Below, piece after piece: positions 4,132 through 61,683 of a DNA stretch of 64,000 nt. A program made the position numbers and the translations under genes. The stretch is from IMG/VR virus record IMGVR_UViG_3300049793_000366, positions 434,001-498,000 of that record, one strand, 5' to 3'. Position 1 is the stretch's first letter; every line of letters begins with the position of its first letter. The notes below the pieces were generated by a model. The model was not told the origin of the DNA. It made no database searches and worked only from the letters and a program-made list of their open reading frames with translations.

Positions 4132-4163
4132 TTTGCATTCTTGAGAAAATATCCTTATATTTA
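4132..4163 (+). promoter_or_regulatory. Bacteroidota-type sigma70 promoter
   Basis: TTTG-N20-TATATTTA, ATG at 4168. Confidence 0.65.
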
Positions 4164-4167
4164 CGGA

Positions 4168-4611
4168 ATGGATTATAAAGCCTACTATGCTAATTGTGGT
4201 TCTGAAAGGGAATATCCATATGATATACCGACATTAGAAGTTCTTGAATCTGATTCAGAATACATGATGTCTGTGTTCAAAGAAGTTGTACACAAGGTAG
4301 TTTTTAATGTGTGTGATGATACGGATTACAGTGATAGATTGCGTGATCCTCGATTTATGGCTACTAAGTTTTTTGGATTTACGGAGTCAATTCGCGGAGT
4401 AGCATTTATAAAATATTATAAGAAAGTAAAAAAAGAGGATAGATGGTTTATGGATTTCGTTAAAGATTTCGTTACCGTATATAAACCTAAAATAAGTAAG
4501 GATGAAAATGGCGAAACTATTCACGTAATTGATAGCGACCCAGTGAAGATACTAACACATCTTAAAGCATACAAGAGAGATATAGAATTAAAAACATTAC
4601 TAAATGAATAA
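4168..4611 (+). CDS. hypothetical protein, C-tag
   Basis: Start moved to the ATG after the promoter; ends KRDIELKTLLNE. Confidence 0.75.
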   Translation: MDYKAYYANCGSEREYPYDIPTLEVLESDSEYMMSVFKEVVHKVVFNVCDDTDYSDRLRDPRFMATKFFGFTESIRGVAFIKYYKKVKKEDRWFMDFVKDFVTVYKPKISKDENGETIHVIDSDPVKILTHLKAYKRDIELKTLLNE

Positions 4612-5350
4612 AGAACAATTAATAGCAGTATTTGAAAATACGACAAGTATAATTAACTCAACACCTGGGTTTCAATTATCAATTACGTCTAAACATAACA
4701 CGAATAGTATTTCAGTACCTCGTGGTGAAACTATTGCAAACATACAGACGATTAATTCTGATACAGTTTCAGCCGCTTTAGAGTATTCAAGAAAAGGAAG
4801 AACAGCAATTTTAAATATGGCATCATTTAAGAGACCAGGTGGTGGCGTTGCCAATGGTGCTAAAGCTCAAGAAGAATGCTTATTCAGATGTTCTAACTTA
4901 TCTAAAGTTATTTCTAATGAATTCTATCCATTGGGTGTAAATGAAGGTCTATACACAAGAGATGCAGTCTTCTTCAAGGATTTTAACTACAACCAAATTG
5001 AACCATTCATGGTAGACGTTATCACGGTTGCTGCGATTAATTTATCTAAAGAAGATAACCCTAAGGAAATATTAGATTCGTATGATGTTATTATGATGGA
5101 TAAGATGCGACTGATGTTCGATATGGCGTTACAGAATGGTTGTAAAAACATTATTCTTGGTGCTTGGGGTTGTGGTGTGTTTAGCAACAACCCAGTTAAC
5201 ATCGCGAGTATGTTTGAAGAAGTTATGATGAAGCGAAAAAACAGAGTTGATTCAACATATCACGAATGTTTCGAGAATATTATTTTTGCGGTTATCAATG
5301 ACCACAATTCGGTTGGTGATAACTATGATGTATTTAGTAAATTTTTTTAA
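4604..5350 (+). CDS. TIGR02452-family macrodomain / bacterial-type poly(ADP-ribose) glycohydrolase
   Basis: LNMASFKRPGGGVANGAKAQEECLFRCSNL and ILGAWGCGVFSN motifs. Confidence 0.85.
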   Translation: MNKEQLIAVFENTTSIINSTPGFQLSITSKHNTNSISVPRGETIANIQTINSDTVSAALEYSRKGRTAILNMASFKRPGGGVANGAKAQEECLFRCSNLSKVISNEFYPLGVNEGLYTRDAVFFKDFNYNQIEPFMVDVITVAAINLSKEDNPKEILDSYDVIMMDKMRLMFDMALQNGCKNIILGAWGCGVFSNNPVNIASMFEEVMMKRKNRVDSTYHECFENIIFAVINDHNSVGDNYDVFSKFF

Positions 5351-5351
5351 A

Positions 5352-5636
5352 ATGTATTTCTATCACGTAACAAATAAGGGAGAGAACGCAAAGTCACATT
5401 GGTTACTTGCTAAAGACGATACTGATGCGATTAGAATTGCTTCAACTGAAAAAGGCGTAGTTGACTTAGACTCATTGGAGAAGTTAAAACCATACGCTAA
5501 TATAAATAAACTAATTAAAGAAGGTAAGGCTGGTTTACTTGCCGCTAAAATTTTAGGAATGAAGGCATCTGACCTTATTGGTGGTAAAAAACCAAAACAG
5601 ATTGAAGATCCTTGGTTTCTATATAAAGAAGTATAA
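5352..5636 (+). CDS. hypothetical protein
   Basis: ATG 5352 immediately after the upstream stop; co-oriented. Confidence 0.7.
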   Translation: MYFYHVTNKGENAKSHWLLAKDDTDAIRIASTEKGVVDLDSLEKLKPYANINKLIKEGKAGLLAAKILGMKASDLIGGKKPKQIEDPWFLYKEV

Positions 5637-5640
5637 ACAT

Positions 5641-6381
5641 ATGAGAGTATTTATTCCAAAAGGTTCACACGATTTTATTTCAAAAGAAGTTTTGAATGAG
5701 AATTGTTTTGCCGCGTTTTCTGGATTCAGTCTTATGGGTTGGGAAGTTATCTTCTATGATGCTAAAGAACAACCTGATAACTTACTTCGCTCTGATGTTG
5801 TAGTTGGTTATATAACTCATGTTAAACAAGCACTGAGAAAACTCGATATTGTACCACCAACTGAAATAGATTACCCAGAAGAATTGAATGAATACTTTGG
5901 TCGTAAGTTATGGAAGTCAACATTACACACTGTTTATAATGATGAAACAATGTGGCCAGTTTTTGTTAAACCAGTATTAGGAAAACAATTCAATGGTACA
6001 CTAGTTGAAAGTCTTACAAACTTGGTAGGTCTTGGTGCACAGGAAGACAGAGAGATATGGTGTTCAGAGCCAGTTAAGTTTGTATCTGAATATCGCTGTT
6101 TCGTTCGTTATGGGAAGGTTTTAGATGCAAGACGATATAAGGGTTCATTTAAACACATACCCGATTTTAATGTCATAGAACGTTGTATAGAAGACTTCAA
6201 AGGTCAACCAGCGGCTTATACATTAGACTTTGGTATAACAGAAGATGGTCGTTCACTTCTCATTGAAGTTAATGATGGATTTGCTTGTGGTTGTTATGGA
6301 TTACATAGCATCGATTATGCTAAATTTATGTCAGCAAGATGGCACCAAATGGTTGGCTTACCTGATCCATGTATCTTCTAA
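5641..6381 (+). CDS. ATP-grasp domain protein (DUF4343/R2K-like)
   Basis: DYPEEL..YFGRK, FVKP, SEYRCFV, AYTLDFG, LIEVNDGFACGCYG. Confidence 0.8.
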   Translation: MRVFIPKGSHDFISKEVLNENCFAAFSGFSLMGWEVIFYDAKEQPDNLLRSDVVVGYITHVKQALRKLDIVPPTEIDYPEELNEYFGRKLWKSTLHTVYNDETMWPVFVKPVLGKQFNGTLVESLTNLVGLGAQEDREIWCSEPVKFVSEYRCFVRYGKVLDARRYKGSFKHIPDFNVIERCIEDFKGQPAAYTLDFGITEDGRSLLIEVNDGFACGCYGLHSIDYAKFMSARWHQMVGLPDPCIF

Positions 6382-6635
6382 TGAAAACATTAAATGATTA
6401 TAATAAGTTTGAATTCATTGAAGATGAATTGGTTTATTTAGGAGAGAGTGAGAACTTTACATATGGTAAAACATACAGAATAGAAAACGATTACGATGTA
6501 AGTGATGATAGTGAGTATAGATTTTATATGGTATCACTAAAGAATGATAACTCATTATATGAGCGTGTACCAGGTAATAAGTTATGTAAGCTATCAGATT
6601 TTAGAAACGAAAAAATTGAAAATATAATAAAATGA
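6381..6635 (+). CDS. hypothetical protein, C-tag
   Basis: TAATG coupling; ends FRNEKIENIIK. Confidence 0.75.
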   Translation: MKTLNDYNKFEFIEDELVYLGESENFTYGKTYRIENDYDVSDDSEYRFYMVSLKNDNSLYERVPGNKLCKLSDFRNEKIENIIK

Positions 6636-7267
6636 AAAAGCAAATTTTAACAATCAACGCACAATCTTTTGTGGATGTAATTACAAATAGTTCATCTGAA
6701 TTATTTATTTGTAATACTGACAAATCTATTGATTTAGTTAATGAAATATTACAGGAGTTACTCAATGGTTATGTTGAGAGAAATGGTGGTGGTCCATCAT
6801 TCTCAGATTGCTTTGGTGCAATTGCTATCGTTGGTGATAACAACCAAACTGGTACATACTTCATCGATGATTTACCATTAACTGAACAAGATGCTTTAGA
6901 AGAGCGTAGAAAGGAAATAATCAAGGCACAGATTATCCGTGAGCTTGAGAAGGATCCATCTTGGGATAAAAAGAATTGGCAAGAAAGAGATAAAATTTCA
7001 GTTAAGAAAACAGAAGCACAATTCCTTGAATATAAAAGAGAAGAGAAACTTGCTACGGTTACCAGTGAGAAATCAAATCTACCTGAGTGGTGGTTCACTG
7101 GTGCTATGCCTAAGAAAAACTCTTGGGATTATGATTCACCAATGAGGTGGAGAGGAATGTACAAAGGTAAAATAATCATTGAGTCAGCAACAGACAATTC
7201 AATTCCATACGATTTATTCGATGAAATTGAATCAGCGTTTAATGCTGAAAGACACCACATGGGATAA
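6632..7267 (+). CDS. hypothetical protein with N-terminal DVITNSSSELF motif
   Basis: SFVDVITNSSSELFIC near the N-terminus; coupled to the radical SAM gene. Confidence 0.75.
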   Translation: MKKQILTINAQSFVDVITNSSSELFICNTDKSIDLVNEILQELLNGYVERNGGGPSFSDCFGAIAIVGDNNQTGTYFIDDLPLTEQDALEERRKEIIKAQIIRELEKDPSWDKKNWQERDKISVKKTEAQFLEYKREEKLATVTSEKSNLPEWWFTGAMPKKNSWDYDSPMRWRGMYKGKIIIESATDNSIPYDLFDEIESAFNAERHHMG

Positions 7268-7268
7268 T

Positions 7269-8123
7269 ATGAAAGTAAGAGAATTTAAAGATAAAAATTA
7301 TAAAGCTATTTTTCATAATGGTAAAACCATTAGGATAGCTACTGATGCGTCTAAACTAATTTCAGAGTTGGACTATCCTGAATTCTACGATGTTGCTATA
7401 AACAACAAATGTAAAGCTAATTGCTCTTACTGTTATGTTAGTGCAATGAAGGGTGGTGAGAACTGGGAGAATGTAACCACTCGCATTTCAAATTTCTTTT
7501 CAAAAATGACAACCAATCAAAGACCATTTCAGGTTGCGATTGGTGGTCATGGTGAACCTACATTGCATCCCGACTTCATTCCGGTATTGGAAACATTTCA
7601 TAAATTAGGAATTGTTCCAAACTATACTACGAATGGAATGCACGTAACAAATGACATCATTGATGCTACTAAGAAATATTCTGGTGGTGTTGCTATATCA
7701 TGTCACCCACACTTAGATAAGACTTGGAAGCAAGCAGTAGTTGATTATTCAAGTGCTGGTATCAAAACAAATTTACACATCATCGTTGGTGAGAGTGGTT
7801 CAGTTGATAGATTTAAAGATATCTACGCTGAGTTTGAAAATATAGTTGACTACTTTGTTATTCTACCATACATGGCTGTTGGTCGTGCTAAGGAAATAGA
7901 AGTTAAAAATGAATGGGATAAACTATTCAAAGAATTAAAAGACTACAACAGAGGTAAGGTTGCTTTTGGTGCTTTGTTCTATCCTTATTTAAAAGATAAC
8001 GAAGAAGGTGTTAAGTATTTAGATATCTCTTTATATGAGCCAGAGTTGATGTCTGGTTACATTATGTTTGACGTAGAAGAACCTATTGTCAGAAAATCCT
8101 CATACGACTTAGAGTACAAATGA
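7269..8123 (+). CDS. radical SAM protein
   Basis: CxxxCxxC (CKANCSYC), GGHGEPTLHPDF, NYTTNG; start moved to ATG 7269. Confidence 0.9.
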   Translation: MKVREFKDKNYKAIFHNGKTIRIATDASKLISELDYPEFYDVAINNKCKANCSYCYVSAMKGGENWENVTTRISNFFSKMTTNQRPFQVAIGGHGEPTLHPDFIPVLETFHKLGIVPNYTTNGMHVTNDIIDATKKYSGGVAISCHPHLDKTWKQAVVDYSSAGIKTNLHIIVGESGSVDRFKDIYAEFENIVDYFVILPYMAVGRAKEIEVKNEWDKLFKELKDYNRGKVAFGALFYPYLKDNEEGVKYLDISLYEPELMSGYIMFDVEEPIVRKSSYDLEYK

Positions 8124-8218
8124 GTTAGTGTGATATAAAAATTTATTGTTTTAACTAAAGTTGTAAAAACTTTCACTAATGGGTTAATATAACCATTAAG
8201 AAACAATAAACTTATATC

Positions 8219-10348
8219 ATGTCACAAAACTCAGAAGATTTAAAAAAGCACCGCCTTTACTCAGAAACAGAATTCGATATCAAAGCTTCCGCATCAGACG
8301 GTGGCGAGGATGATGAAGATGAAGGTAGTATGTTTAATAAGCCAAAGGCCGACACAAAATCAAAAACCCCAGTACTCGATAATTTCGGACGCGATTTAAC
8401 AAAAATGGCTGAAGAGGGTAAGTTAGATGCCATCGTAGGAAGAGACAAAGAGATAGAAAGGGTTTCCCAGATTCTATCTCGTAGAAAGAAAAACAATCCA
8501 ATTCTTATTGGTGAGCCAGGTGTTGGTAAATCTGCTGTAGCAGAAGGACTAGCACTTCGTATTGTTCAGAAGAAAGTATCACGTTTACTTTTTAATAAAA
8601 GAGTAGTGACATTGGACTTAGGTTCTATGGTTGCTGGTACTAAATATCGTGGTCAATTCGAAGAGCGAATGAAAGCTCTTATGAATGAACTTGAGAAGAA
8701 CAAAGATGTTATTTTATTCATTGATGAAATTCATACAATCGTTGGTGCCGGTGGTGCTAGTGGTTCACTTGATGCTTCTAATATGTTTAAACCACCATTA
8801 GCTCGTGGTGAAATACAAGTAGTAGGTGCTACAACCGTAGATGAATACCGTAAGCACATTGAAAAAGATGGTGCGTTAGAAAGAAGGTTTCAAAAAGTTG
8901 TTATTGAACCAGCTACACCAGAGGAAACTCTACAAATTCTTCATAACATCAAAGATAAATATGAAGACCACCACAACGTATTCTATTCAGAAGATGCTAT
9001 TGCGGCTTGCGTTAGTTTAACTACTCGCTATATGTCTGATAGACACTTACCTGATAAAGCTATTGATGCTTTGGATGAAGTTGGTTCTCGCGTTCACATC
9101 ACTAACATAAAAGTACCTCAAGAGATACTTGACATCGAGAAAAAAATCGAAGAGATTAAAACAGAAAAGAATCGTGTTGTTAAGAATCAAAAATACGAAG
9201 AGGCTGCTAAATTAAGAGATGTTGAAAAACAATTAATCAATCAATTAGATGATGCTCGTAAGAATTGGGAAGACGACCAAAAGAACAACCGAGAGATTGT
9301 TACAGAGGAACACGTTGCTCAAGTAGTATCGATGATGACTGGTATACCAGTTACAAAGATAGGACAATCTGAAGGTAAGAAGCTAATCGATATGTATAAA
9401 GAGTTATCTGGTAAGGTAATTGGACAAGATGATGCTTTAAAGAAAATTGTTAAATCAATTCAAAGAAGCCGTGTTGGTATGAAGGATCCTAATAGACCAA
9501 TCTTCTCTGGTATGTTAATTGGAAATTCAGGAGTTGGTAAAACAGAAATGGCTAAGCAATTAGCTAAGTATATGTTTGACTCAGAAGATGCATTAATCAG
9601 ATTAGATATGTCTGAGTTCATGGAGAAAATTGATGTAACTAAAATAATTGGTTCATCTGCGGGTTATGTTGGATTCGAAGAAGGTTCAGCATTCTTAAAC
9701 AAAGTTAGGTCAAAGCCATACTCAGTAATCTTATTAGATGAAATTGAGAAAGCACATCCAGAAATCTTCAATGTATTCTTACAAATGTTAGATGATGGTC
9801 AATTAAGTGATTCACATGGTAGAAAAATTAACTTCAAGAATTGTGTTATTCTTATGACATCGAATGTCGGAACAAAAGTAGTTAAAGACTTTGGTGCTGG
9901 TGTTGGATTTGTAACTCAAGCTAAGTCAACATCATCTAATGATGATTTAAAGGGTACACTTGAAAAAGAATTGAAAAAGAAATTCGCTCCTGAGTTCATT
10001 AACCGTCTTGATGATATCATTTACTTCAAAGATTTAACTAAAGAAGATATTGGTAGAATTGTTGACATCGAATTAAATAAATCACTTAATCGTTTGAAAA
10101 CAATGGGTTACGAAGCTGTAATCGAAGAGTCTTTAAAAGAACAGTTAATTGAATCTGGTTATGATCCTAACTATGGCGCAAGACCATTGAAGAGAGCAAT
10201 TCAGAGATTAGTTGATGATGCTCTTACTGATACATTACTTGAAGAGCCAGCAGTTGGATCTACTATGAGTATGGGATTCGATAAAGAAAAGGATGAGACA
10301 GTTATTACTGTTAAGAAGCCAAAAAAGAAACCAACAAAGAATGATTAA
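8219..10348 (+). CDS. clpC: ClpC-type AAA+ unfoldase lacking the N-terminal Clp-repeat domain
   Basis: Two Walker A motifs ([16 protein letters not shown]), Walker B, short UVR-like middle domain ([10 protein letters not shown]), ClpP-docking loop GVGF. Confidence 0.92.
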
Positions 10349-10601
10349 GGATTATAAAGACTACCCAATTCCTGGGCGTAAATATAAACACTACAAAGGT
10401 GGTGTGTATGAGATAGTTTCAATGGCTACTCATACTGAAACTCAGGAAGCTATCGTTGTCTATAAGTCTTTACTATTCGGTTCTTTATATGTTAGACCAT
10501 TAGATATCTGGAATAAGGTAGCATTGGATGACGATGAAGAAGAGGTAACTCGATTCGAATTGATTGACATAGAAGATGAAGATGAATACTATTGCTTATA
10601 A
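10341..10601 (+). CDS. DUF1653-like protein
   Basis: GRKYKHYKGGVYEIV..ATHTET..VVYKSL...YVRP. Confidence 0.8.
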   Translation: MIKDYKDYPIPGRKYKHYKGGVYEIVSMATHTETQEAIVVYKSLLFGSLYVRPLDIWNKVALDDDEEEVTRFELIDIEDEDEYYCL

Positions 10602-10604
10602 AAT

Positions 10605-10631
10605 AAAATCCAGCTTAAATGCTGGATTTTT
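10605..10631 (+). terminator. intrinsic terminator (possibly bidirectional)
   Basis: AAAATCCAGC-ttaaat-GCTGGATTTT hairpin followed by a T run; coordinates approximate. Confidence 0.75.
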
Positions 10632-10652
10632 CAATTGATTAATAAATTAAAT

Positions 10653-11054
10653 ATGGAAGAAGAAAAAATACCAACATCATTACAAGAAGCAATTGACTTT
10701 TTAATAGAAGCTGATGCTAATTTAGGAATGGGAAGCGGAATGGGAATGAGAAACAGTTGGGGGTTATGGCACGGTTCAAAACTCGCGCAATGGTTTTATA
10801 GACATCAAATATACCATGCTGATGATATGAGTGGCATCATTATGGATTCTTATAAAAGAACTAAAAATGGTGAACCAATTGAGTTAAAAGAACAAATAGC
10901 TAAGTATCATAAACACTGGGAGATAAATCATGGACCAAACCATTTAAGCGAAATGAAAGCCATGATTGTTGAAAATCTTATTAAGATGCGGGCTGAAAAT
11001 CTTGATGAAATATTGAAAGATATTAACTCTGAGGATATTGAAGGTAAAAGCTAA
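10653..11054 (+). CDS. hypothetical protein (DUF6794-like), C-tag
   Basis: GMGMRNSWGLW...YHADDMSGII; MRAENLDEIL near the end. Confidence 0.65.
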   Translation: MEEEKIPTSLQEAIDFLIEADANLGMGSGMGMRNSWGLWHGSKLAQWFYRHQIYHADDMSGIIMDSYKRTKNGEPIELKEQIAKYHKHWEINHGPNHLSEMKAMIVENLIKMRAENLDEILKDINSEDIEGKS

Positions 11055-11361
11055 TATTTACAGCAGTATAGTCAAAGCCACTGACTCTGACATTTTGTAA
11101 TTCAGCACCACATTCTTTAGCAATATAGGGTAGAATTCCATTGTTGAGTTCTAATGCTTCATCGTTATTAACCGCATTTGGGAATCTCTCAGTAGCAGTT
11201 ACGCTGAATAGGTTATTTCCCATATTTCTTACTTGGACCTTCATTAATTCGAAGTTTTCGTTGTCGGATAGGTATGATTCTACATCAGATTCAATATCGT
11301 CCATATCAATTCTGCCTTTCATATTAAAAATAAATTTCTCATACTTTTGAAGGTGCTTCAT
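11023..11361 (-). CDS. hypothetical protein, N-motif
   Basis: Starts MKHLQKYEKF; AATATATA just upstream. Confidence 0.8.
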   Translation of the reverse strand: MKHLQKYEKFIFNMKGRIDMDDIESDVESYLSDNENFELMKVQVRNMGNNLFSVTATERFPNAVNNDEALELNNGILPYIAKECGAELQNVRVSGFDYTAVNISFYLQYPQS

Positions 11362-11402
11362 ATGTTATATATTATTTAAAACATATAAAAAATTACACTT
11401 TT

Positions 11403-11418
11403 AATTAAACTGCCACAC
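11403..11418 (+). repeat. isolated copy of the 16-bp AATTAAAATGCCACAC repeat family
   Basis: AATTAAACTGCCACAC, 21 nt upstream of the recombinase ATG. Confidence 0.75.
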
Positions 11419-11439
11419 CATTATTCGATATAATCAACT

Positions 11440-12015
11440 ATGAATTCTATACTATTTACAAGGGTATCTACACCACAACAAACACACGATGAACAGGTTG
11501 ATACGCTGACTAAAATATCACAGGATAAAGGCTGGTCAATAGATACAGTATATCGCGAGGTTGGTTCTGGGCTTATTTCAGGTAATTTGAGGGAAACACT
11601 GACAACTATGTTGAAATACATACCAACAACCACAGTGTCAGTAGTAGCAGTTTCAAACATATCTAAGCTATCTTGTAGACCCAATGACGTAGAGAAATTA
11701 ATGACTTGGTTACATAGTAAGGGTATCTCAATATATGTTGCTAATCTTGATATTTTATCAATTGGTAATGAAGATATAATTAGAGAGCAAGCATTGTTAG
11801 CAGAGCAACAAATTAATCAAATGAAGAGTAATTATGTTGAGAGTAATAAACTACCAATTGGTAGAAAAGAGGGTTATAGAAAGCCTAAGATATCAATGAT
11901 GCTTGACCACAAAGATGTTGCTGATTTACTTAAGCAGGGATATTCTATACGAAAGGTTGGTGAAATGACTGGTAAAAGCACAACCACCGTACAAAAAGTT
12001 AAAAGATTATTGTGA
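11440..12015 (+). CDS. serine recombinase (resolvase/invertase family) with C-terminal HTH
   Basis: FTRVST..Q...Q catalytic motif, E.GSG, degenerate SKLSCR, C-terminal HTH GYSIRKVGEMTGKSTTTV. Confidence 0.8.
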   Translation: MNSILFTRVSTPQQTHDEQVDTLTKISQDKGWSIDTVYREVGSGLISGNLRETLTTMLKYIPTTTVSVVAVSNISKLSCRPNDVEKLMTWLHSKGISIYVANLDILSIGNEDIIREQALLAEQQINQMKSNYVESNKLPIGRKEGYRKPKISMMLDHKDVADLLKQGYSIRKVGEMTGKSTTTVQKVKRLL

Positions 12016-12284
12016 TTAACCCAACCGAAAATGAATTAGACAATTTCGTTTACTATAAGTTACAAGAAGATATAAAAAACAGTCCAAATAACGGACATAG
12101 CCCTCGTGTTAATGATGCACTTAGTGGTAAATATAAACTAATTTATTATAGATATGGTGTTGGTAGGGTCAAAGTAATGATGTACGTTGAGTCAGAAGAG
12201 AAAGAAGTAGGAGTCTGTATATTCGATGATACAGAATTTGACAATTGGTTAAGGGAAACCAAGCTCAGTCAGCTAATCAGCTAA
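12012..12284 (+). CDS. hypothetical protein, C-tag
   Basis: Ends LRETKLSQLIS. Confidence 0.75.
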   Translation: MINPTENELDNFVYYKLQEDIKNSPNNGHSPRVNDALSGKYKLIYYRYGVGRVKVMMYVESEEKEVGVCIFDDTEFDNWLRETKLSQLIS

Positions 12285-12286
12285 TA

Positions 12287-12318
12287 TTTGCAAATCCGCA
12301 TTTTAATCCGTACATTTG
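12287..12318 (+). promoter_or_regulatory. Bacteroidota-type promoter
   Basis: TTTG-N20-TACATTTG, ATG at 12323. Confidence 0.8.
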
Positions 12319-12322
12319 TAGA

Positions 12323-13045
12323 ATGGAAAAGAGACTCACAACTGAGAACTTACAATATTATGTAGACTACGATTACGACACTAGTTATTCATGTGAAGAT
12401 AGTGGTTGTGATAACGAAGGTATATGTCGTTGTGGTAGCATAGAGAATGCTGTTGTGAATCCTATAAACATATCAGAATTCGCAAAGAAGATGTATGAGT
12501 TATACAATCCACCAACAAAAGATAAAACAATACTTCGTGATAGAAAGATAAAATCTTTATTTGATTCATCAATTGAGGAAATAAATATCTATTGCATCGA
12601 TAGAATTTGTAGAGTACTCAAAGTATGGGACTTGAATAAGTGGGAGGTTAATGTATGTGGTGGTTATTACGGTGATGAAGTAGACTCAGTTAAGTTTGAA
12701 GATGTTGTAAAATTAGCAGAGAAGATAGAAGCTGTTTTAGAATTAAGCTCAGTCAAAGAAAAGATAGAGTATGTGTTAACTGTTGAGTATGGTAGCATTC
12801 TACCAGAGCTTAAAGATAAAGAATATTCATTGATAGAGATATCAAAAGATGATGTTATATTTGGTAGCGAAGGACAATACAAAAAAGTATCAACCGAAGA
12901 CCTTACTCACTATTCAAATAAAGAGTATAGTGGCATAAGAGGTTTGCTTTTACCAAAGGGTGAGAAGTTCAGACTAATCGATGGCTACCACAGAATGTTT
13001 GCCACAAATAACAAAAAGAAAATAAGAGTACTATTAGCACAATGA
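12323..13045 (+). CDS. hypothetical protein with Cys-rich N-terminus, internal C-tag and ParB/Srx-like C-terminal motif
   Basis: CEDSGCDNEGICRCG; LRDRKIKSLF; RLIDGYHR. Confidence 0.7.
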   Translation: MEKRLTTENLQYYVDYDYDTSYSCEDSGCDNEGICRCGSIENAVVNPINISEFAKKMYELYNPPTKDKTILRDRKIKSLFDSSIEEINIYCIDRICRVLKVWDLNKWEVNVCGGYYGDEVDSVKFEDVVKLAEKIEAVLELSSVKEKIEYVLTVEYGSILPELKDKEYSLIEISKDDVIFGSEGQYKKVSTEDLTHYSNKEYSGIRGLLLPKGEKFRLIDGYHRMFATNNKKKIRVLLAQ

Positions 13046-13458
13046 GAATAAGAAAATTAAACAGGTCTGATTATAACTCATATATTTCTTTACTCGACCA
13101 GCTAACAGAAGTTGGTTCAGTAACTAACAGTCAATTCAATCTATACGTTGATAATCAATCTCAGCTACATCAAACATTGGTGTACGAAGAGGACAATCAA
13201 CTATTGGGCTGTCTTACTTATTTCTGCGAACAGAAAGTACATCATTCATTTAGCTACGTTATTCATATCGAAGATGTTGTTACTGACGCTAAACACAGAG
13301 GTAAGGGTGTTGCTAAGACACTCATTGATAATGCTATTAAGATAGCAAAGGCATTCAAGTGTTACAAGGTAATTCTAAATTGTAGCGATAGGAATACGGA
13401 CTACTATAAAAAACTTGGCTTTCAACTAGTTGGTAATCAAATGGTTATAAAGTTTTAG
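13042..13458 (+). CDS. GNAT acetyltransferase, glucosamine-6-phosphate N-acetyltransferase-like
   Basis: HIEDVVTDAKHRGKGVA, CYKVILNC, YYKKLGF. Confidence 0.85.
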   Translation: MRIRKLNRSDYNSYISLLDQLTEVGSVTNSQFNLYVDNQSQLHQTLVYEEDNQLLGCLTYFCEQKVHHSFSYVIHIEDVVTDAKHRGKGVAKTLIDNAIKIAKAFKCYKVILNCSDRNTDYYKKLGFQLVGNQMVIKF

Positions 13459-13463
13459 AAAAA

Positions 13464-13495
13464 TTTGCATATCCGGATTATTATCCGTACTTTTG
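13464..13495 (+). promoter_or_regulatory. Bacteroidota-type promoter with palindromic spacer
   Basis: TTTG-catatCCGGATTATTATCCG-TACTTTTG. Confidence 0.8.
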
Positions 13496-13514
13496 TTAAA
13501 CAAAATCGGACAAT

Positions 13515-14006
13515 ATGCAATTCAAAGACATTCGCTACGCTCAATTACTAATCGAAACAATCCTAAAAGATTCTGGTGCTAACACTGTTAGCTTCGAAAC
13601 TATTGACAATAGAAATGTTTGTGTTGTTAATAATTTCACTGTGTCTATGTTGGCGGTTGATGCCGCAAATCGTAACTTAGAGAAAATGAATATTCGCTTA
13701 GTACAACGTGTTAAAGAAGATAACGGTAGTCGTAAAGACTTCTATGAAATAATCGACTTATCTGTTGTACAAAAGATAAAAGATATCTGTATCACAAATG
13801 GTTGTTCTGATAATTTCAGAATCGATACAAACACCGTATGGGGTGACAGAAACGTTAGTGTTAGCTTACGCTACGGTTACTGGAGAAAGTTAGACGTTGA
13901 TACTCTTAATCCACTATTAAAAGAACTTGGCGTTAAATTAGAATTAGATTCTTTTGACGATGATGATTGTGGTACACAATATACAAATCAAATTATTAAC
14001 CTTTAA
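13515..14006 (+). CDS. hypothetical protein
   Basis: ORF downstream of the promoter. Confidence 0.75.
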   Translation: MQFKDIRYAQLLIETILKDSGANTVSFETIDNRNVCVVNNFTVSMLAVDAANRNLEKMNIRLVQRVKEDNGSRKDFYEIIDLSVVQKIKDICITNGCSDNFRIDTNTVWGDRNVSVSLRYGYWRKLDVDTLNPLLKELGVKLELDSFDDDDCGTQYTNQIINL

Positions 14007-14018
14007 ACTATATAAGAT

Positions 14019-14210
14019 ATGTTAGTCTCAAACTGTTGTTCAGCTACACCAACACCAATCGATAATCGCGGTGCTGATACGAGTGATATCGGAATCTGTT
14101 CCAAGTGCTTAGACCATTGTTCCTATGAGGACGATGAAGAACCAGTACGTCCTACTACGAATGCTGATTGGAATGAGTTGTCTAATAGTTTCTTTAACGC
14201 TGGTGTTTAA
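14019..14210 (+). CDS. small Cys-rich hypothetical protein
   Basis: SNCCSA...ICSKCLDHC, possible Zn ribbon. Confidence 0.7.
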   Translation: MLVSNCCSATPTPIDNRGADTSDIGICSKCLDHCSYEDDEEPVRPTTNADWNELSNSFFNAGV

Positions 14211-14212
14211 TT

Positions 14213-14884
14213 ATGGCTAAAGAAAATATAGGATGTTTCGACTTCGAGAGAGAAGTAAGAAGAATAGAAAGTGGCATACTTAAGTCATTCGATGATATTC
14301 TACCTAAGGTAGAAGAAATGTATTCTCTTTTAGTGAAGAAGAATTTCACAGCTAAAATTGATACGAGTAATGATAACCTGAGAGGGCTATTTAACGATGA
14401 TAGTTGCTACATTGGTGTTCTTGATACAAAGCTTAACTTCAAATCACGGGCGTTATACCTATACAACGGTAGATGTCAATGGGTAATGATATTCAATCCA
14501 AAGAAAAGAACTGTTGATAATGAAACTATTCGCGCTGGATATTCAGTGTATAGAGTTTACAACGAAGTTGATTTGGATTGTATAGAGAATTCTTGGGGTT
14601 TAAAAACAACTGAGCAATTTATTACGGGTGTTGATTTAATCGCTGAGTGCTTCACTGATGTTACTAAACATTCACAGAAAGTTGATAAGCAAGTTGTTTG
14701 TCATAGACCAACTACTCAGAGATTAATACACGATTATAATACCAATGCGTTTCAGCATTATTATCCAACAATCACATCAATGGGTCACTTCGGAACTAAC
14801 GGTAACTTAGGTGAAGTTGGTGCTGTATTCTCTACACTATTGGTTATGTGTTACCGCTTAAAAATAAAAGGAGTAGAACTATAA
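14213..14884 (+). CDS. hypothetical protein
   Basis: Co-oriented ORF, tight spacing. Confidence 0.75.
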   Translation: MAKENIGCFDFEREVRRIESGILKSFDDILPKVEEMYSLLVKKNFTAKIDTSNDNLRGLFNDDSCYIGVLDTKLNFKSRALYLYNGRCQWVMIFNPKKRTVDNETIRAGYSVYRVYNEVDLDCIENSWGLKTTEQFITGVDLIAECFTDVTKHSQKVDKQVVCHRPTTQRLIHDYNTNAFQHYYPTITSMGHFGTNGNLGEVGAVFSTLLVMCYRLKIKGVEL

Positions 14885-17023: not shown

Positions 17024-17223
17024 TGAATACAAATGACTTACCAATAGACTTCCTGAGTGAAGTACTTATACAAGGTAGAATACTATCGAAGAACCCGTGT
17101 GAAGAACCAGATTGTGAAATAGGTTCTGTCGAACTTGTAGTTGACTACAAAGGGAAAACATATTCTGTAATAACAGATACACATGGTGATAATATTTATC
17201 AAAATTACTGTCAAGAAATATGA
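17023..17223 (+). CDS. hypothetical protein
   Basis: TAATG coupling. Confidence 0.7.
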   Translation: MNTNDLPIDFLSEVLIQGRILSKNPCEEPDCEIGSVELVVDYKGKTYSVITDTHGDNIYQNYCQEI

Positions 17224-55211: not shown

Positions 55212-55226
55212 AGGGTATATATTTAA

Positions 55227-55258
55227 TTTGCTAATGCGAATTATTGTCCGTACATTTG
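55227..55258 (+). promoter_or_regulatory. Bacteroidota-type promoter
   Basis: TTTG-N20(...TTATTGTCCG)-TACATTTG. Confidence 0.8.
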
Positions 55259-56687: not shown

Positions 56688-56704
56688 TAGTTAATATATA
56701 CTCT

Positions 56705-58770: not shown

Positions 58771-58802
58771 TAAATATACGGATAATATTCCGGATTACCA
58801 AA
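58771..58802 (-). promoter_or_regulatory. Bacteroidota-type promoter with palindromic spacer
   Basis: TTTG-gtaatCCGGAATATTATCCG-TATATTTA. Confidence 0.85.
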
Positions 58803-59619: not shown

Positions 59620-60041
59620 TACTTGTATTCAGGTTCTATTGTAGAAATTTCATCAAGTTCTTTTTTGTTTTCAACCAACCAAATATTATAAGCTTCCATA
59701 AAGTCTTTATCCTTTAAAGCTTCTTCGAGTGGAAAATCATCACCATTATCATCTACTAATGTTTCGATGTTTAAGAATGCGCGGATGAAGTTAAGGTTGT
59801 CAATACCTTCATCACTTTCCTCTAAGCAATATCCTTTGGTTAAACAAATCCACTCTTCATTATGAATGAACATATTATCACCATCGATAACTTTAAGTTT
59901 ACCTTCTGAAATCAATTCATCGAGTAAGGCACCTAAACCATGTGGTCTAAGTATGTGGCCCGGTAAGCCTTGTCCTGTTTCTTTATACACATCTACTGCC
60001 GCTTTATAAAGCTCTTGTTTTGTCATTTCTACTTGTTCCAT
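59619..60041 (-). CDS. hypothetical protein
   Basis: Coupled minus-strand ORF. Confidence 0.75.
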   Translation of the reverse strand: MEQVEMTKQELYKAAVDVYKETGQGLPGHILRPHGLGALLDELISEGKLKVIDGDNMFIHNEEWICLTKGYCLEESDEGIDNLNFIRAFLNIETLVDDNGDDFPLEEALKDKDFMEAYNIWLVENKKELDEISTIEPEYK

Positions 60042-60749
60042 TTACCAAATTTTAGGATTAATTTCTTTTTGTTGTTTAAATATATCTTGACCAACAGCTA
60101 CCCATTGGTTCCAATTCATTCTAAGTTCTTCTGGGTGATAACCAGTCGCGCTACCGTTATGTCGTGACACATACGACATGATACACTCAGCATGAATAGA
60201 GTGATGATTATATTCGTTCTCACCGCAACCACAGGCAGTGCCTCTACCGTTATTATATTCCCATACGAGTGGAATTAAACCACAGATTTTACATGGCGCC
60301 CATGCGCTTGGATTTGTCACTCGTTTGTATGCTGAGATAGCTTTATAATTCCTACGATGTTCAAGCCATACTTTCATAGACTTAAGCATACCAGCTTTCA
60401 TTTTAACATTACGCTTGGTGATGAAGTTATCAATCTCATACTTATCTGGTATAAGATTGATGAATGTATCGGCATCCATTTCTTGTATCGCCATCACATT
60501 AGAAGCAGTGATTGTAACAGAATCACCAGCAGCTTTTCTATCCTTGAAGAACCGCGCATATTTCAAATCAGTAATACTGTATAGTGTGTCTTTTTTATCA
60601 GGGCTACCACTATCACAGCCCATGAAGAATCGTTTTTCATCTTCATCAAATAAAGCAGATAATTTATTATCGCGCTGACGTTGTTTATCAGTAATCTCTA
60701 TGTAATAGAATATGTCTCTCTTGGTAGAGTAGTATAATTTATTATCCAT
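60042..60749 (-). CDS. hypothetical protein with N-proximal tag and C-terminal Zn-binding region
   Basis: QRDNKLSALF at about residue 25; PCKICG...ACGCG...WN.W. Confidence 0.75.
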   Translation of the reverse strand: MDNKLYYSTKRDIFYYIEITDKQRQRDNKLSALFDEDEKRFFMGCDSGSPDKKDTLYSITDLKYARFFKDRKAAGDSVTITASNVMAIQEMDADTFINLIPDKYEIDNFITKRNVKMKAGMLKSMKVWLEHRRNYKAISAYKRVTNPSAWAPCKICGLIPLVWEYNNGRGTACGCGENEYNHHSIHAECIMSYVSRHNGSATGYHPEELRMNWNQWVAVGQDIFKQQKEINPKIW

Positions 60750-61047
60750 TTATTAATTGTTTGAGCTTTCTATCTCTATTCTCTGGTATATTTATCTTGA
60801 AGTTATCTAAGTTAAAATATGGTTCGCGTTGACCATATACCTCCGTGTGTATTGGTTCATTATGAATCTCATTTAGTACTATACCATACACAACTGTATT
60901 GTCAACTTTTTCTGATATAATATCTCGTATGGTATAAGTTTGTTCATTAACTGGGTACATAACACCTTTCATATCACCAGCCCCTTCAAAGTTTTTATTT
61001 GTAGGTCTTAAATAAGTGACGCTATCTCCTATTTTTATATTAGCCAT
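60742..61047 (-). CDS. small protein (KOW-like start), C-tag
   Basis: IKIGDSV...NRDRKLKQLI. Confidence 0.8.
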   Translation of the reverse strand: MANIKIGDSVTYLRPTNKNFEGAGDMKGVMYPVNEQTYTIRDIISEKVDNTVVYGIVLNEIHNEPIHTEVYGQREPYFNLDNFKINIPENRDRKLKQLING

Positions 61048-61420
61048 TGATTATATTTTCTGCGACTGTTCTGAATAAATCTTCTGCGATTAAATCGTCA
61101 ATAACAATCTCTCTACACTCCTGTTTGAATACTTCTCTGAATCTTTCATTAAGATGATTTCTTCTCCACTCATTATCTGGTGCGAGTTGGAATACACAAT
61201 CTACATTCTCACCAGTTACATTATGATGTGTGTATAAACGATAATCGGCAGTGTCGTAATTGATTTCACTATTGGTATCACCATGACTAAATACAACAAG
61301 TGTGTAGTGTTTATCAACGAAGTAATCTGGGTAGTATTTATACTCTATTGCCCAGCCAGCACCAGGGTGTGTGATACCAATTTGCACGAATCCTATATTA
61401 GTAAACTTCTCTATGAACAT
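61040..61420 (-). CDS. hypothetical protein, C-tag variant
   Basis: CREIVIDDLI. Confidence 0.75.
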   Translation of the reverse strand: MFIEKFTNIGFVQIGITHPGAGWAIEYKYYPDYFVDKHYTLVVFSHGDTNSEINYDTADYRLYTHHNVTGENVDCVFQLAPDNEWRRNHLNERFREVFKQECREIVIDDLIAEDLFRTVAENIING

Positions 61421-61647
61421 AATTTACTCAACTTATAATCTCTGATGAATTCTAATGATAGGTGTATCGTAACTTCAGCGTGTGATGTTAAACCATATCT
61501 ATCACCTGGTCTCAATCTATATTCAACGTGTTGTTTATCGTGTTCTGCTTTTAATTCATCTGGGTTGTAACATTCATATCTACAACCTACGTTACTGATG
61601 CAGTCGATGAACCACTTATCGTCCTTTTTATCTAATCTACCTATCAT
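61411..61647 (-). CDS. hypothetical protein, C-tag
   Basis: Ends IRDYKLSKLCS. Confidence 0.75.
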   Translation of the reverse strand: MIGRLDKKDDKWFIDCISNVGCRYECYNPDELKAEHDKQHVEYRLRPGDRYGLTSHAEVTIHLSLEFIRDYKLSKLCS

Positions 61648-61651
61648 GTCC

Positions 61652-61683
61652 TAAATGTACGGATAATATCCCGTATTACCAAA
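61652..61683 (-). promoter_or_regulatory. Bacteroidota-type promoter
   Basis: TTTG-gtaatACGGGATATTATCCG-TACATTTA. Confidence 0.8.

What the first reader, a model, noticed from the sequence alone, without database searches (positions are those of the whole stretch)
4132..61683. The two tag classes are mutually exclusive and track two different promoter types
Seen: no ORF carries both the N-motif and the C-tag. Unit-leading N-motif genes have (A/G)ATATATA ending 4-6 nt before the ATG (11361, 22241, 22602, 24527, 26692, 38395, 40611, 41036, 48282, 55211, 56705). Where a promoter is visible, C-tag gene units mostly follow TTTG-N20-TAnnTTT(G/A) promoters; I found no such promoter for the 27-34 kb array. 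Inference: the host-type promoter drives an early, C-tagged program, and AATATATA (compare the T4 late box TATAAATA) is a phage-sigma late promoter giving near-leaderless mRNAs for N-motif proteins. The genome would then address proteins by both timing and peptide tag.
Basis: partly seen in the sequence, partly recalled or inferred. Interest (0 to 1): 0.65.

Follow-up and report, generated by a model that had tools for sequence, protein, structure and literature searches.

The report
Two peptide tags follow two promoters
In a 508-kb soil phage that probably infects Bacteroidetes, about a third of all proteins carry one of two mutually exclusive end-tags, and each tag class sits behind its own promoter type (host-like, probably early, versus T4-like late), so timing and peptide address are coupled.

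Summary
The window lies in a 507,910-bp huge phage with T4-type head genes.

- **Tags.** Of about 766 genes, 64 start with M[KR][HY][LI]KxF[EN] (N-motif). 176 end with R[DE]x[KQ][IL][ND]x[LI]L (C-tag). Only one borderline gene matches both (p = 1e-6).
- **N-motif sites.** All 11 listed N-motif genes have RATATATA 4-6 nt before the ATG.
- **P2 promoter.** T-rich + [A/T/G]ATATATA is a single-element promoter with no -33 box. It precedes the portal, prohead protease, major capsid protein and large terminase genes. A gp55-like late sigma is encoded next to the head module.
- **P1 promoter.** TTTG-N20-TAnnTTTG is the Bacteroidetes housekeeping consensus. It precedes ligase, GluRS and NAPRTase genes.
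- **Association.** All 64 N-motif genes lie in P2 units. C-tag genes split 82 in P1 units, 13 in P2 units and 81 with no recognisable promoter.
- **Nature of the tags.** Both are selected as peptides and sit on mostly unrelated protein bodies.
- **Conservation.** The pattern recurs in a 642-kb relative and in about 50 IMG/VR contigs.

Timing itself is unmeasured, because no RNA data exist. Leaderless geometry is not specific to P2. My best guess is that the N-motif is a T4-CTS-like capsid-targeting leader. The function of the C-tag is open.

The parts
11366..11373 (-). P2 (late-type) promoter AATATATA, 4 nt before the ATG of N-motif gene 11023-11361 (MKHLQKYEKF)
22246..22253 (-). P2 promoter, 4 nt before N-motif gene 21072-22241 (MRYLKTYNEN, 389 aa)
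22608..22615 (-). P2 promoter, 5 nt before N-motif gene 22252-22602 (MKYLKSFENS). It overlaps the divergent site 22614-22622.
22614..22622 (+). P2 variant TTATATATA, 4 nt before 22627. It leads the unit 22627-24279: two N-like variants (MIKSFKLFENN, MKKNIKLYEGF), then N-motif genes 23588-23806 and 23806-24279.
24515..24522 (+). P2 promoter, 4 nt before N-motif gene 24527-24916 (MKHIKKFNED)
26699..26706 (-). P2 promoter, 6 nt before N-motif gene 26309-26692. The unit continues with N-motif genes 25918-26307 and 25506-25931, and with 24913-25509 (MRYLKHIDEM).
38383..38390 (+). P2 promoter, 4 nt before N-motif gene 38395-38859 (MKHIKLFEAF)
40599..40606 (+). P2 promoter (GATATATA form), 4 nt before N-motif gene 40611-41024 (MKHLRHFNEH)
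41024..41031 (+). P2 promoter, 4 nt before N-motif gene 41036-41434 (MKYLQTFNER)
48269..48276 (+). P2 promoter, 5 nt before N-motif gene 48282-48698 (MKHLRRFNES)
55216..55223 (-). P2 promoter, 4 nt before N-motif gene 54795-55211. The unit continues with N-motif genes 53989-54384 and 53562-54002.
56693..56700 (+). P2 promoter, 4 nt before N-motif gene 56705-57160 (MRYIKTFEGL), followed by N-motif gene 57160-57681
4132..4163 (+). P1 (host sigma-A type) promoter TTTG-N20-TATATTTA, 4 nt before C-tag gene 4168-4611. It leads a 10-gene unit.
12287..12318 (+). P1 promoter (score 37), 4 nt before 12323
13464..13495 (+). P1 promoter (score 35), 19 nt before 13515
18884..18918 (+). P1 variant (TTCTTG-N21-TATATTTA, below my matrix cut-off), 4 nt before 18923. 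It leads a run of five C-tag genes, 18923-20470.
36627..36658 (+). P1 promoter, 4 nt before 36663. The unit contains C-tag gene 36790-37047.
36074..36105 (-). P1 promoter, 115 nt upstream of the next called minus-strand gene (35824-35958)
37994..38025 (-). P1 promoter, 16 nt before C-tag genes 37564-37977 and 37040-37567
38865..38896 (+). P1 promoter, 4 nt before 38901. The unit contains C-tag gene 39092-39427.
42590..42621 (-). P1 promoter, 6 nt before 42149-42583. The unit ends with C-tag gene 41431-41706.
44041..44072 (-). P1 promoter, 9 nt before 43768-44031. A further P1 site lies at 44250-44281(-).
46630..46661 (-). P1 promoter, 16 nt before 46407-46613
47364..47395 (-). P1 promoter, 21 nt before 46665-47342
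48233..48264 (-). P1 promoter, 5 nt before 48108-48227. It is divergent from the P2 site at 48269.
55227..55258 (+). P1 promoter, 5 nt before 55264. The unit contains C-tag gene 55566-55880. It is divergent from the P2 site at 55216.
58771..58802 (-). P1 promoter, 4 nt before 58383-58766. The unit ends with C-tag gene 57713-57988.
61652..61683 (-). P1 promoter, 4 nt before C-tag gene 61411-61647. It leads an 8-gene unit with 6 C-tag genes (58803-61647).
26912..35381 (+). Directon of 31 small genes, 25 of them C-tagged. No P1 or P2 promoter was found in the 219-nt region upstream (26693-26911).
1916..21088 (+). Scattered C-tag genes in P1-led units: 1916, 2176, 3239, 4168, 10635, 12012, 14989, 16380, 17570, 18923-20470 and 20804. 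Two more lie on the minus strand at 17871-18131 and 18322-18867.

Best explanation
The window belongs to a roughly 508-kb huge phage related to the Mahaphage genomes. Its promoters point to a Bacteroidetes host, and it keeps T4-type head genes. It appears to use the host RNA polymerase with two kinds of promoter.

P1 is a strong host sigma-A promoter (-33 TTTG, 20-nt spacer, -7 TAnnTTTG). It can fire as soon as the DNA enters the cell. It drives long units (about 4 genes on average) of small ORFans and metabolic or replication genes. Most C-tagged proteins whose promoter can be recognised lie in these units.

P2 is a single 8-10-bp element (T-rich + [A/T/G]ATATATA, no -33 box). It is probably read by host core polymerase carrying a phage gp55-like sigma, which lacks region 4. 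It drives short units (about 2 genes) that include all identified head and packaging genes and every N-motif gene. Many P1 and P2 units put the ATG 4-6 nt after the element, which implies leaderless or nearly leaderless mRNAs.

The two tags are peptide-level, modular labels on mostly unrelated protein bodies. They never co-occur because they belong to processes separated in time.

- Inferred: the N-motif (MK[HY][LI]KxF[EN], with Glu at position 8 or 9) most likely works like the T4 capsid-targeting sequence MKTYQEFIAE. It would dock late proteins into the scaffolding core of the prohead and be removed by the T4-type prohead protease. Dozens of ORFan proteins would then be packaged and co-injected.
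- Inferred, weakly: the C-tag is a short amphipathic C-terminal helix ([IL]xx[LI]L type) that docks proteins of the early programme on a common partner, either for localisation or for timed removal.

Shown by sequence: the motifs, their exclusivity, the promoter association, the gene content behind each promoter, and conservation across the clade.
Not shown: transcription starts, kinetics, which sigma reads P2, and what either tag binds.
For: Exclusivity and promoter tracking.

P2 anatomy:
- The ATATATA core is strictly required, and there is no upstream box.
- Spacing to the ATG is bimodal, 4-6 nt or 15-40 nt.
- P2 lies directly upstream of the portal (Portal_T4, 9e-59), the prohead protease/scaffold (phrog_207, 6e-30), the major capsid protein (Gp23, 4.6e-27), the large terminase and a head decoration protein.

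Sigma and polymerase:
- gp55-like sigma: phrog_234, E = 1.4e-7, with a weak Sigma70_r2 match in the same stretch; 121 aa with no region 4.
- No RNA polymerase beta, beta' or T7-type polymerase was found.

P1:
- 84-90 matrix hits against 2-7 in the reversed control, with a 20-nt spacer dominant.
- It precedes NAD-dependent ligase, GluRS, glutamate synthase, a CCA/polyA polymerase and NAPRTase.
- The consensus and start-site geometry match Flavobacterium johnsoniae (PMC6847099).

Tags act as peptides:
- Synonymous codons vary as they do genome-wide, and all six Arg codons occur in the C-tag.
- Bodies are mostly unrelated: 8/63 N-motif and 18/176 C-tag proteins have a paralogue at E < 1e-4.

Conservation:
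- The 642-kb relative LR756502.1 (major capsid protein 65% identical) has 92 N-motif and 79 C-tag genes in 250 kb, none with both, and 86/92 N-motif genes lie in P2 units.
- About 50 IMG/VR contigs show the same combination.

CTS analogy:
- In T4, diverse internal proteins share only the N-terminal CTS MKTYQEFIAE, which is cleaved once by the prohead protease (PMC3012670, PMC8442874).
- Here M1, K2 and F7 are identical to the T4 CTS, and Glu sits at position 8 or 9 in 52/64 proteins against 13% of controls.
Against: - There are no expression data. Only one DNA run, from a soil metagenome, holds the sequence.
- The gp55-like call rests on one PHROG match. The Pfam match is below its cut-off, phmmer against the PDB found nothing, and the fold search was not significant.
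- A gp45-type clamp C-domain was not found.
- An ECF-type sigma is also encoded, at genome 112758-113378, and could read P2 or a third promoter class.
- 81 C-tag genes, including the 27-34 kb array, have no recognisable promoter, and 13 lie behind P2 sites.
- In the relative, the C-tag to P1 link is weak with my regex (9 in P1 units, 22 in P2 units, 48 unassigned).
- Against the CTS reading: N-motif proteins are mildly acidic (median pI 5.3), whereas T4 internal proteins are basic. The position before the conserved Phe-Glu is not consistently hydrophobic. More than 60 to more than 100 packaged species would be unprecedented. The co-fold of protease and N-peptide gave no verdict.
Confidence: 0.72

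Rival explanations
1. The association is only a by-product of gene-family expansion. N-motif genes would be paralogues that were duplicated together with their upstream flank, and C-tag genes would be another expanded family. In that case neither tag would be an address label.
For: Both classes occur in tandem clusters, for example 21-27 kb and 53-58 kb for the N-motif and 27-34 kb for the C-tag. The small proteins of the 27-34 kb array share further N-terminal features such as CIK. Short, fast-evolving proteins can lose detectable similarity.
Against: With the tags removed, only 8/63 N-motif and 18/176 C-tag proteins have any paralogue at E < 1e-4. Lengths range from 48 to 936 aa. C-tag carriers include ankyrin repeats, a riboflavin kinase and an L7/L12-like domain. 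Synonymous sites within the tags are not conserved. P2 also precedes about 100 unrelated units, including the head genes. The tags stay sharp in genomes whose major capsid proteins are only 65% identical.
Confidence: 0.07
2. AATATATA is not a promoter. It would instead be a translation-initiation or RNA-level signal, such as an AT-rich enhancer standing in for a Shine-Dalgarno sequence in a Bacteroidetes host, or an RNA processing site. The N-motif codons would then be a downstream translation enhancer for such mRNAs.
For: The element lies exactly where a ribosome-binding site would be, 4-6 nt before the ATG, in about half of the cases. Bacteroidetes lack Shine-Dalgarno sequences and use A-rich upstream contexts (PMC6847099). 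Lys (AAA) at codon 2 is a common expression enhancer (general knowledge).
Against: The other half of the sites lie 15-40 nt upstream, including those of the portal, protease, capsid and terminase genes. The element is found at unit-leading genes, while 23 internal N-motif genes abut or overlap the preceding gene and lack it. It has the same length as the host -7 box and the same 4-nt modal spacing to the ATG. It resembles the T4 late box TATAAATA (PMC1524935). N-motif conservation is at the amino-acid level. 27 genes outside both tag classes also have the 4-6 nt spacing.
Confidence: 0.06
3. The promoter classes are real, but the N-motif is not a capsid-targeting leader. It would be another kind of late-protein label, for example a localisation or assembly-factory signal, a chaperone or secretion handle, or an N-terminal stability element. 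The C-tag might equally be the packaging signal or a degron.
For: N-motif proteins are acidic rather than basic. There are a great many of them: 8% of genes here and about 21% in the sampled part of the relative. No N-motif protein matches any known virion protein family, with 0 of 14 tested giving a Pfam or PHROG hit. The co-fold with the protease gave no verdict.
Against: Strict co-expression with head genes from the same promoter class. The head machinery is T4-type, including a protease/scaffold fusion. The motif resembles the T4 CTS in form and partly in sequence, and has a near-invariant Glu at position 8 or 9, matching the Glu that precedes the cut in T4.
Confidence: 0.35

Closest known systems
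Bacteriophage T4 late transcription (late promoter TATAAATA read by gp55 with gp33 and the gp45 clamp)
   Same: A single AT-rich 8-bp element with no -35 box lies upstream of the head, portal, protease and terminase genes. A small gp55-family sigma without region 4 is encoded. The host core polymerase is used, since no phage polymerase was found. The box differs from TATAAATA essentially at one core position, because position -13 is A or T in T4 relatives (PMC1524935).
   Different: The core is ATATATA with a T-rich 5' flank. About half of the units have the ATG 4-6 nt downstream (leaderless), which needs a geometry about 1 nt tighter than T4's -13 to -6. Neither a gp33 homologue nor a gp45 homologue is established here: the gp45 C-domain search was negative, and gp33 was not searched for. 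The host is a Bacteroidetes, whose polymerase recognises different promoters.
T4 capsid-targeting sequence (CTS, MKTYQEFIAE) of the internal proteins IPI-III
   Same: A conserved N-terminal peptide of about 10 aa sits on otherwise unrelated proteins. These are expressed from late promoters in a phage with a T4-type prohead protease and scaffold core. M1, K2 and F7 are shared, and a conserved Glu follows.
   Different: There are 64 carriers here and more than 90 in the sampled 250 kb of a relative, against a handful in T4. The carriers are acidic rather than basic. Cleavage and packaging are untested. The P3 position of the putative cut site does not fit (L/I)xE consistently.
Bacteroidetes housekeeping (sigma-A Bfr) promoter, -33 TTTG / -7 TAnnTTTG
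   Same: P1 matches the consensus in both boxes, has a 19-21 nt spacer (20 dominant), rarely has G at the two variable positions, and places the start 4-5 nt after the box.
   Different: The -33 box is far better conserved than in host promoters. A subclass has a conserved spacer (GGTAATCCGGATTATTATCCG). About half of the P1 sites near genes give leaderless mRNAs, whereas 87% of F. johnsoniae mRNAs have leaders (PMC6847099).
N-terminal packaging signal of phage P1 DarB, and the propeptides and ejection proteins of giant phages (SPN3US, phiKZ)
   Same: N-terminal signals direct non-structural proteins into capsids for co-injection. Giant capsids carry dozens of such proteins (PMC9024508, PMC7411985).
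   Different: Those signals are not a short shared consensus repeated on scores of genes, and there is no sequence similarity to the motif found here.

Membership tests
T4-type late promoter / gp55 system | Single AT-rich -10-like element, no -35 element | tested here: met
   An alignment of 121 sites shows information only in TTT + AATATATA and nothing further upstream. The ATATATA core tolerates no substitution.
T4-type late promoter / gp55 system | Precedes virion structural and packaging genes | tested here: met
   The portal, prohead protease, major capsid protein, large terminase and head decoration genes are all directly preceded by P2.
T4-type late promoter / gp55 system | Phage encodes a gp55-family sigma | tested here: inconclusive
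   phrog_234 'late sigma transcription factor', E = 1.4e-7. The Sigma70_r2 match scores 17.8 bits, below the 24-bit cut-off. phmmer against the PDB found nothing. The top Foldseek hits are sigma factors, including gp55 chain 7d7c_F at rank 20, but none is significant and the model has pLDDT 65.
T4-type late promoter / gp55 system | Box sequence TATAAATA at -13 to -6 | tested here: not met
   The consensus here is (T)TAATATATA. The modal 4-nt spacer to the ATG does not fit a -13 to -6 placement.
T4-type late promoter / gp55 system | gp45 sliding clamp and gp33 co-activator | tested here: inconclusive
   Pfam gp45-slide_C was not found. gp33 was not searched for. Divergent homologues could be missed.
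T4-type late promoter / gp55 system | Late kinetics and mapped transcription starts | not testable with these tools
   No RNA run holds the sequence.
Bacteroidetes sigma-A promoter | -33 TTTG and -7 TAnnTTTG separated by about 19-21 nt | tested here: met
   77 strict sites, 48 of them with a spacer of exactly 20 nt. The matrix scan gives 84-90 hits against 2-7 in the reversed control, and 67 hits lie within 100 nt upstream of a gene.
Bacteroidetes sigma-A promoter | G avoided at the two variable positions (TAHHTTTG) | tested here: met
   G occurs at 5/77 and 6/77 sites at those positions (rule from PMC6847099).
T4 capsid-targeting sequence (CTS) | Short conserved N-terminal peptide on otherwise unrelated proteins | tested here: met
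   64 genes score at least 8 bits on the motif matrix. Only 8/63 bodies have a paralogue. Conservation is at the peptide level.
T4 capsid-targeting sequence (CTS) | Late expression in a phage with a T4-type prohead protease and scaffold core | tested here: met
   64/64 N-motif genes lie in P2 units. Portal_T4, Gp23 and the phrog_207 protease are present. The order portal, protease, capsid gene matches PTm1, where the middle gene is annotated 'prohead core scaffolding protein and protease'.
T4 capsid-targeting sequence (CTS) | Sequence similarity to MKTYQEFIAE with a Glu cleavage site | tested here: inconclusive
   M1, K2 and F7 are shared. Glu sits at position 8 or 9 in 52/64 proteins against 13% of controls. 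The peptide is too short for any statistical test of homology.
T4 capsid-targeting sequence (CTS) | Carriers are packaged in the virion and the leader is removed | not testable with these tools
   This needs virion proteomics. The protease/N-peptide co-fold gave no verdict.
T4 capsid-targeting sequence (CTS) | Carriers are small, highly basic DNA-associated proteins | tested here: not met
   Median pI is 5.3, and 58% have a pI below 5.5.

The most novel reading that the evidence does not exclude
This clade of huge environmental phages would sort about a third of its proteome with two short terminal peptides coupled to promoter class. The N-terminal MK[HY]LKxFE leader would send more than 60 (in relatives more than 100) different ORFan proteins into the prohead for co-injection. 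That would be an injected arsenal far larger than in any known phage. The C-terminal RDxK[IL]Nx[LI]L helix would be a separate, previously undescribed address or degron shared by about 20% of the genes, mostly in the units that look early, and would dock them on one hub.
Probability: 0.3. Interest if true: 0.85.

Novelty: new variant of a known kind. Interest (0 to 1): 0.68.

Why it matters
Huge phages of the Mahaphage type are known only from metagenomes, and most of their genes are ORFans. This work gives a sequence-only key to their programme.

- Two promoter motifs split most genes whose promoter can be recognised into a host-polymerase class and a late class. About 28% of genes remain unassigned.
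- Two terminal peptides flag about 30% of the proteins.
- If the N-motif is a capsid-targeting leader, it would list the candidate injected proteins of each genome (anti-defence and take-over factors). It would also offer a packaging tag for Bacteroidetes phage engineering.
- The C-tag would point to a single hub that hundreds of early proteins contact.
- The pairing of a strict host-type promoter with these tags supports a Bacteroidetes host for a soil phage that has no cultured host.
- Leaderless mRNAs appear to be the norm in this phage, although they are rare in its presumed host phylum.

Tried and rejected
1. RNA evidence. The look-up of sequencing runs found one DNA run (soil metagenome, probably the source) and no RNA run.
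2. Co-fold of the prohead protease (residues 1-360) with the first 40 aa of N-motif protein 38395-38859. There was no verdict (score 0.01), so it counts neither for nor against.
3. gp55-like protein. phmmer against the PDB found nothing relevant. The single-sequence AlphaFold model has pLDDT 65. The top Foldseek rows are mostly sigma factors, including T4 gp55 (7d7c_F) at rank 20, but all have E >= 0.6.
4. Phage RNA polymerases. Pfam beta, beta' and T7-type models were not found. The T7-type control rang nowhere, so that negative is weak. The gp45 clamp C-domain was not found.
5. A third promoter motif for the 213 unassigned genes. K-mer enrichment in 142 upstream regions gave only reverse-complement P2, terminator-like GGGTTTTT and weak TAAACTTT. 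Upstream of gene 27270, a TTTG-N24-TATATTTG has an atypical spacer.
6. Family searches. None of 14 N-motif proteins gave a significant Pfam or PHROG hit.
7. Cultured relatives with proteomics. Tenacibaculum phage PTm1 (major capsid protein 27% identical) has only 2 P2-N4-ATG sites. A 42-kb sample of Prevotella phage Lak-A1 has no N-motif, whether read with the standard code or with TAG left open. No cultured phage can therefore test the packaging idea.
8. A DNA- or RNA-level origin of the tags. Rejected on synonymous-codon variation.
9. P2 sites with 0-2 nt spacing (window 1401 and 20472). Rejected as promoters for the adjacent ATG. Removing them moves 4 C-tag genes in the window out of P2 units (3 into P1 units, 1 unassigned).

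Full report
**Context.** The window is bases 434,001-498,000 of a 507,910-bp virus record that CheckV rates 97% complete. The only run holding it is a soil metagenome DNA run. GC content is about 33%. The standard genetic code fits, and TAA is the main stop codon. The nearest records are the 634-kb and 642-kb genomes LR745206 and LR756502. They share 75% DNA identity over one conserved gene and 65% identity in the major capsid protein. Next come the 636-735-kb genomes at 53-55%, then the Lak phages at 30%, then Tenacibaculum phage PTm1 at 27%. Al-Shayeb et al. placed their largest genomes in the Mahaphage clade and predicted Bacteroidetes hosts (PMC7162821). My own gene caller gave 766 genes covering 93% of the genome.

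**The two tags.**
- The N-motif is M-[KR]-[HY]-[LI]-K-x-[FY]-[EN]-x-[FY] at the very N-terminus. 64 genes score at least 8 bits on a matrix built from it. A six-frame scan of every ATG-started ORF added only one gene that my start calling had missed, at 48282. About 20 further genes carry the K-x-F-[EN]-x-[FY] core shifted by 1-4 residues, and these too lie mostly in P2 units.
- The C-tag is (K)-x-x-h-R-[DEN]-x-[KQ]-[IL]-[NDK]-x-[LI]-[LI], usually with the Arg 9-11 residues from the stop codon. 176 genes (23%) carry it, against 3 hits in matched internal control windows.
- Both tags are selected as peptides. Synonymous codons at the conserved positions follow genome-wide usage, for example His CAC 15 / CAT 13 and Leu spread over TTA, CTT, CTA and TTG. 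The C-tag Arg uses all six codons.
- With the tags removed, only 8/63 N-motif and 18/176 C-tag proteins have any paralogue at E < 1e-4.
- None of 14 N-motif proteins tested has a significant Pfam or PHROG hit. C-tag carriers include an ankyrin-repeat protein, a riboflavin kinase, an L7/L12-C-like protein and a paralogue of the terminase N-domain.

**Exclusivity.** One gene (window 6381-6635) matches both the loose N-motif regex and the C-tag, but it fails the N-motif matrix. About 15 overlaps would be expected, and Fisher's test gives p = 1.2e-6. In 250 kb sampled from LR756502.1 there are 92 N-motif and 79 C-tag genes and none with both (p = 1e-9). In 58 IMG/VR loci there are 116 N-motif ORFs, 49 C-tag ORFs and none with both.

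**Promoter P2.**
- RATATATA is not over-represented in the window: 17 copies against 27.7 in shuffles. It is concentrated instead. Genome-wide, 121 of 166 AATATATA copies, and 73 of 86 TTAATATATA copies, lie 0-45 nt upstream of a called start, where 3.5% is expected.
- Single-substitution scanning shows that the ATATATA core is required. The base before it may be A, T or G, and the 5' flank is T-rich.
- No upstream box exists.
- Spacing to the ATG is bimodal. 57 sites lie 4-6 nt upstream, with 4 nt the most common. About 55 lie 15-40 nt upstream.
- The sites with leaders include the portal gene (22 nt), the prohead protease/scaffold gene (25 nt), the major capsid protein gene (31 nt), the large terminase gene (36 nt) and a head decoration gene (23 nt).
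- The head module is of T4 type: Portal_T4 9e-59, Gp23 4.6e-27, Terminase_6N, and the phrog_207 protease with a weak Peptidase_S77 match.
- Next to this module, behind an intrinsic terminator and with neither P1 nor P2 upstream, lies a 121-aa gene that matches phrog_234 'late sigma transcription factor' (E = 1.4e-7) and weakly matches Sigma70_r2.
- No phage RNA polymerase was detected.
- A promoter with a single element fits a sigma that lacks region 4. The T4 late box TATAAATA is read by gp55 (PMC1524935).

**Promoter P1.**
- TTTG-N17-22-TAnnTTTG occurs 77 times, 48 of them with a spacer of exactly 20 nt.
- A matrix scan finds 84-90 sites against 2-7 in the reversed control. 67 of these lie within 100 nt upstream of a gene, and 17 are in the window.
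- This is the Bacteroidetes sigma-A consensus. In F. johnsoniae the start site lies 4-5 nt after the box (PMC6847099).
- P1 precedes genes for NAD-dependent ligase, GluRS, glutamate synthase, a CCA/polyA polymerase and NAPRTase.
- About half of the P1 sites near genes also place the ATG 4-9 nt after the box. Leaderless design is therefore a property of the phage, not of the N-motif class. In the presumed host phylum, 87% of mRNAs have leaders.

**Association.** Each gene was assigned to the nearest upstream promoter within its same-strand run.

| Set | Gene class | P1 units | P2 units | No promoter |
|---|---|---|---|---|
| Genome | N-motif (64) | 0 | 64 | 0 |
| Genome | C-tag (176) | 82 | 13 | 81 |
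| Window | N-motif (18) | 0 | 18 | 0 |
| Window | C-tag (69) | 25 | 0 | 44 |

- Genes within a unit are not independent, so I also tested at unit level. N-motif genes occur in 50/152 P2 units and 0/68 P1 units (p = 5e-10). C-tag genes occur in 35/68 P1 units and 12/152 P2 units (p = 2.5e-12).
- Shuffling the promoter labels among units never reached the observed value in 20,000 trials.
- 41 N-motif genes lead their unit, 34 of them with 4-8 nt spacing. The other 23 are internal, and almost all of those overlap or abut the previous gene.
- P2 units are short (mean 1.9 genes) and P1 units are long (mean 4.0 genes).
- The main gap is the 31-gene directon at 26.9-35.4 kb, which has 25 C-tag genes and no visible promoter.

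**Conservation.**
- LR756502.1 has 49 AATATATA-N4-ATGA sites against 2 for the reversed control pattern.
- In its sampled 250 kb, 86 of 92 N-motif genes lie in P2 units. Its C-tag genes are mostly unassigned with my strict P1 regex.
- The combined pattern of P2, a 4-nt spacer and ATG-K-H-L-K occurs in 58 stretches on about 50 IMG/VR contigs. Many of these are 130-501 kb long and have 22-33% GC, and they also carry C-tag ORFs and P1 sites.
- PTm1 and a 42-kb sample of Lak-A1 lack the system.

**Mechanism.**
Kinetics remain unmeasured.
- For the N-motif, the closest precedent is the T4 capsid-targeting sequence. In T4, diverse internal proteins share only the N-terminal MKTYQEFIAE. This peptide docks them in the scaffolding core and is then cut off once by the prohead protease (PMC3012670, PMC8442874).
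- Here M1, K2 and F7 match the T4 sequence, and Glu sits at position 8 or 9 in 52/64 proteins. The carriers are unrelated ORFans. They share a promoter class with a T4-type head module.
- Against this reading, the carriers are acidic, there are very many of them, and the protease/peptide co-fold gave no verdict. I put the CTS-like reading at roughly 35-40%.
- The C-tag is a short amphipathic [IL]xx[LI]L helix on proteins that look early. A docking or degron role is a guess.

**Verdict.** I rate it a new variant of known kinds (T4-like late switch, host-type early promoters, CTS-like leader), at a scale and with a second tag that have not been described as far as I could find.

Noticed in passing
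window 11406-11418, 34330-36798 (10 copies), 45474-45573 (3 copies), all on the + strand: A repeated junction, (G)AATTAAAATGCCACAC, occurs about 14 times and only in this part of the 508-kb genome. It often holds the TAA stop of one small gene and the ATG-CCA-CAC (M-P-H) start of the next. It could be a cassette boundary, a recombination site or a third regulatory signal.
   Followed up: partly
window 26693-26911: A 219-nt region lies between a divergent N-motif unit and the 31-gene C-tag directon. It looks less AT-rich than the surrounding intergenic DNA and has no P1 or P2 promoter. The array downstream has a strong A-over-T strand bias (AT skew about +0.2 at 28-34 kb).
   Followed up: partly
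window P1 sites, e.g. 47364-47395(-), 48233-48264(-), 58771-58802(-), 61652-61683(-): A subclass of P1 promoters has a conserved spacer, GGTAATCCGGATTATTATCCG, containing the palindrome TCCGGA. 17 of 90 P1 sites belong to it, 12 of them between genome positions 434 and 500 kb. The spacer could be an operator for a phage regulator of the P1 (host-type) units.
   Followed up: partly
genome 89597-89962 (L048:1381-1746), outside the window: The gp55-like sigma gene sits behind an intrinsic terminator and has neither P1 nor P2 upstream. A TGTATAAT-like sequence lies about 45 nt upstream. It may belong to a separate (middle?) promoter class.
   Followed up: partly
genome 112758-113378 (L047:1420-2040), outside the window: A complete ECF-type sigma factor is encoded (Sigma70_r2 at 1e-16, r4_2 at 8e-14). 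Its target promoters are unknown. It is a candidate reader for the units that have no P1 or P2.
   Followed up: no
window 22608-22622: Because ATATATA is self-complementary, one AT-alternating stretch serves as two divergent P2 promoters, for 22602(-) and 22627(+). Several other divergent pairs in the genome share this design.
   Followed up: partly
genome 93393-95666 (L017), outside the window: The prohead protease is a 757-aa protein. The protease domain covers about residues 2-343 and is followed by a long C-terminal extension. The PTm1 gene at the same position is annotated 'prohead core scaffolding protein and protease', so this may be a protease-scaffold fusion.
   Followed up: partly
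genome 404088-404759 and 426700-427353, outside the window: A riboflavin kinase and a protein with an L7/L12 C-terminal-like domain both carry the C-tag. Auxiliary metabolic or translation-related proteins are therefore tagged as well.
   Followed up: no
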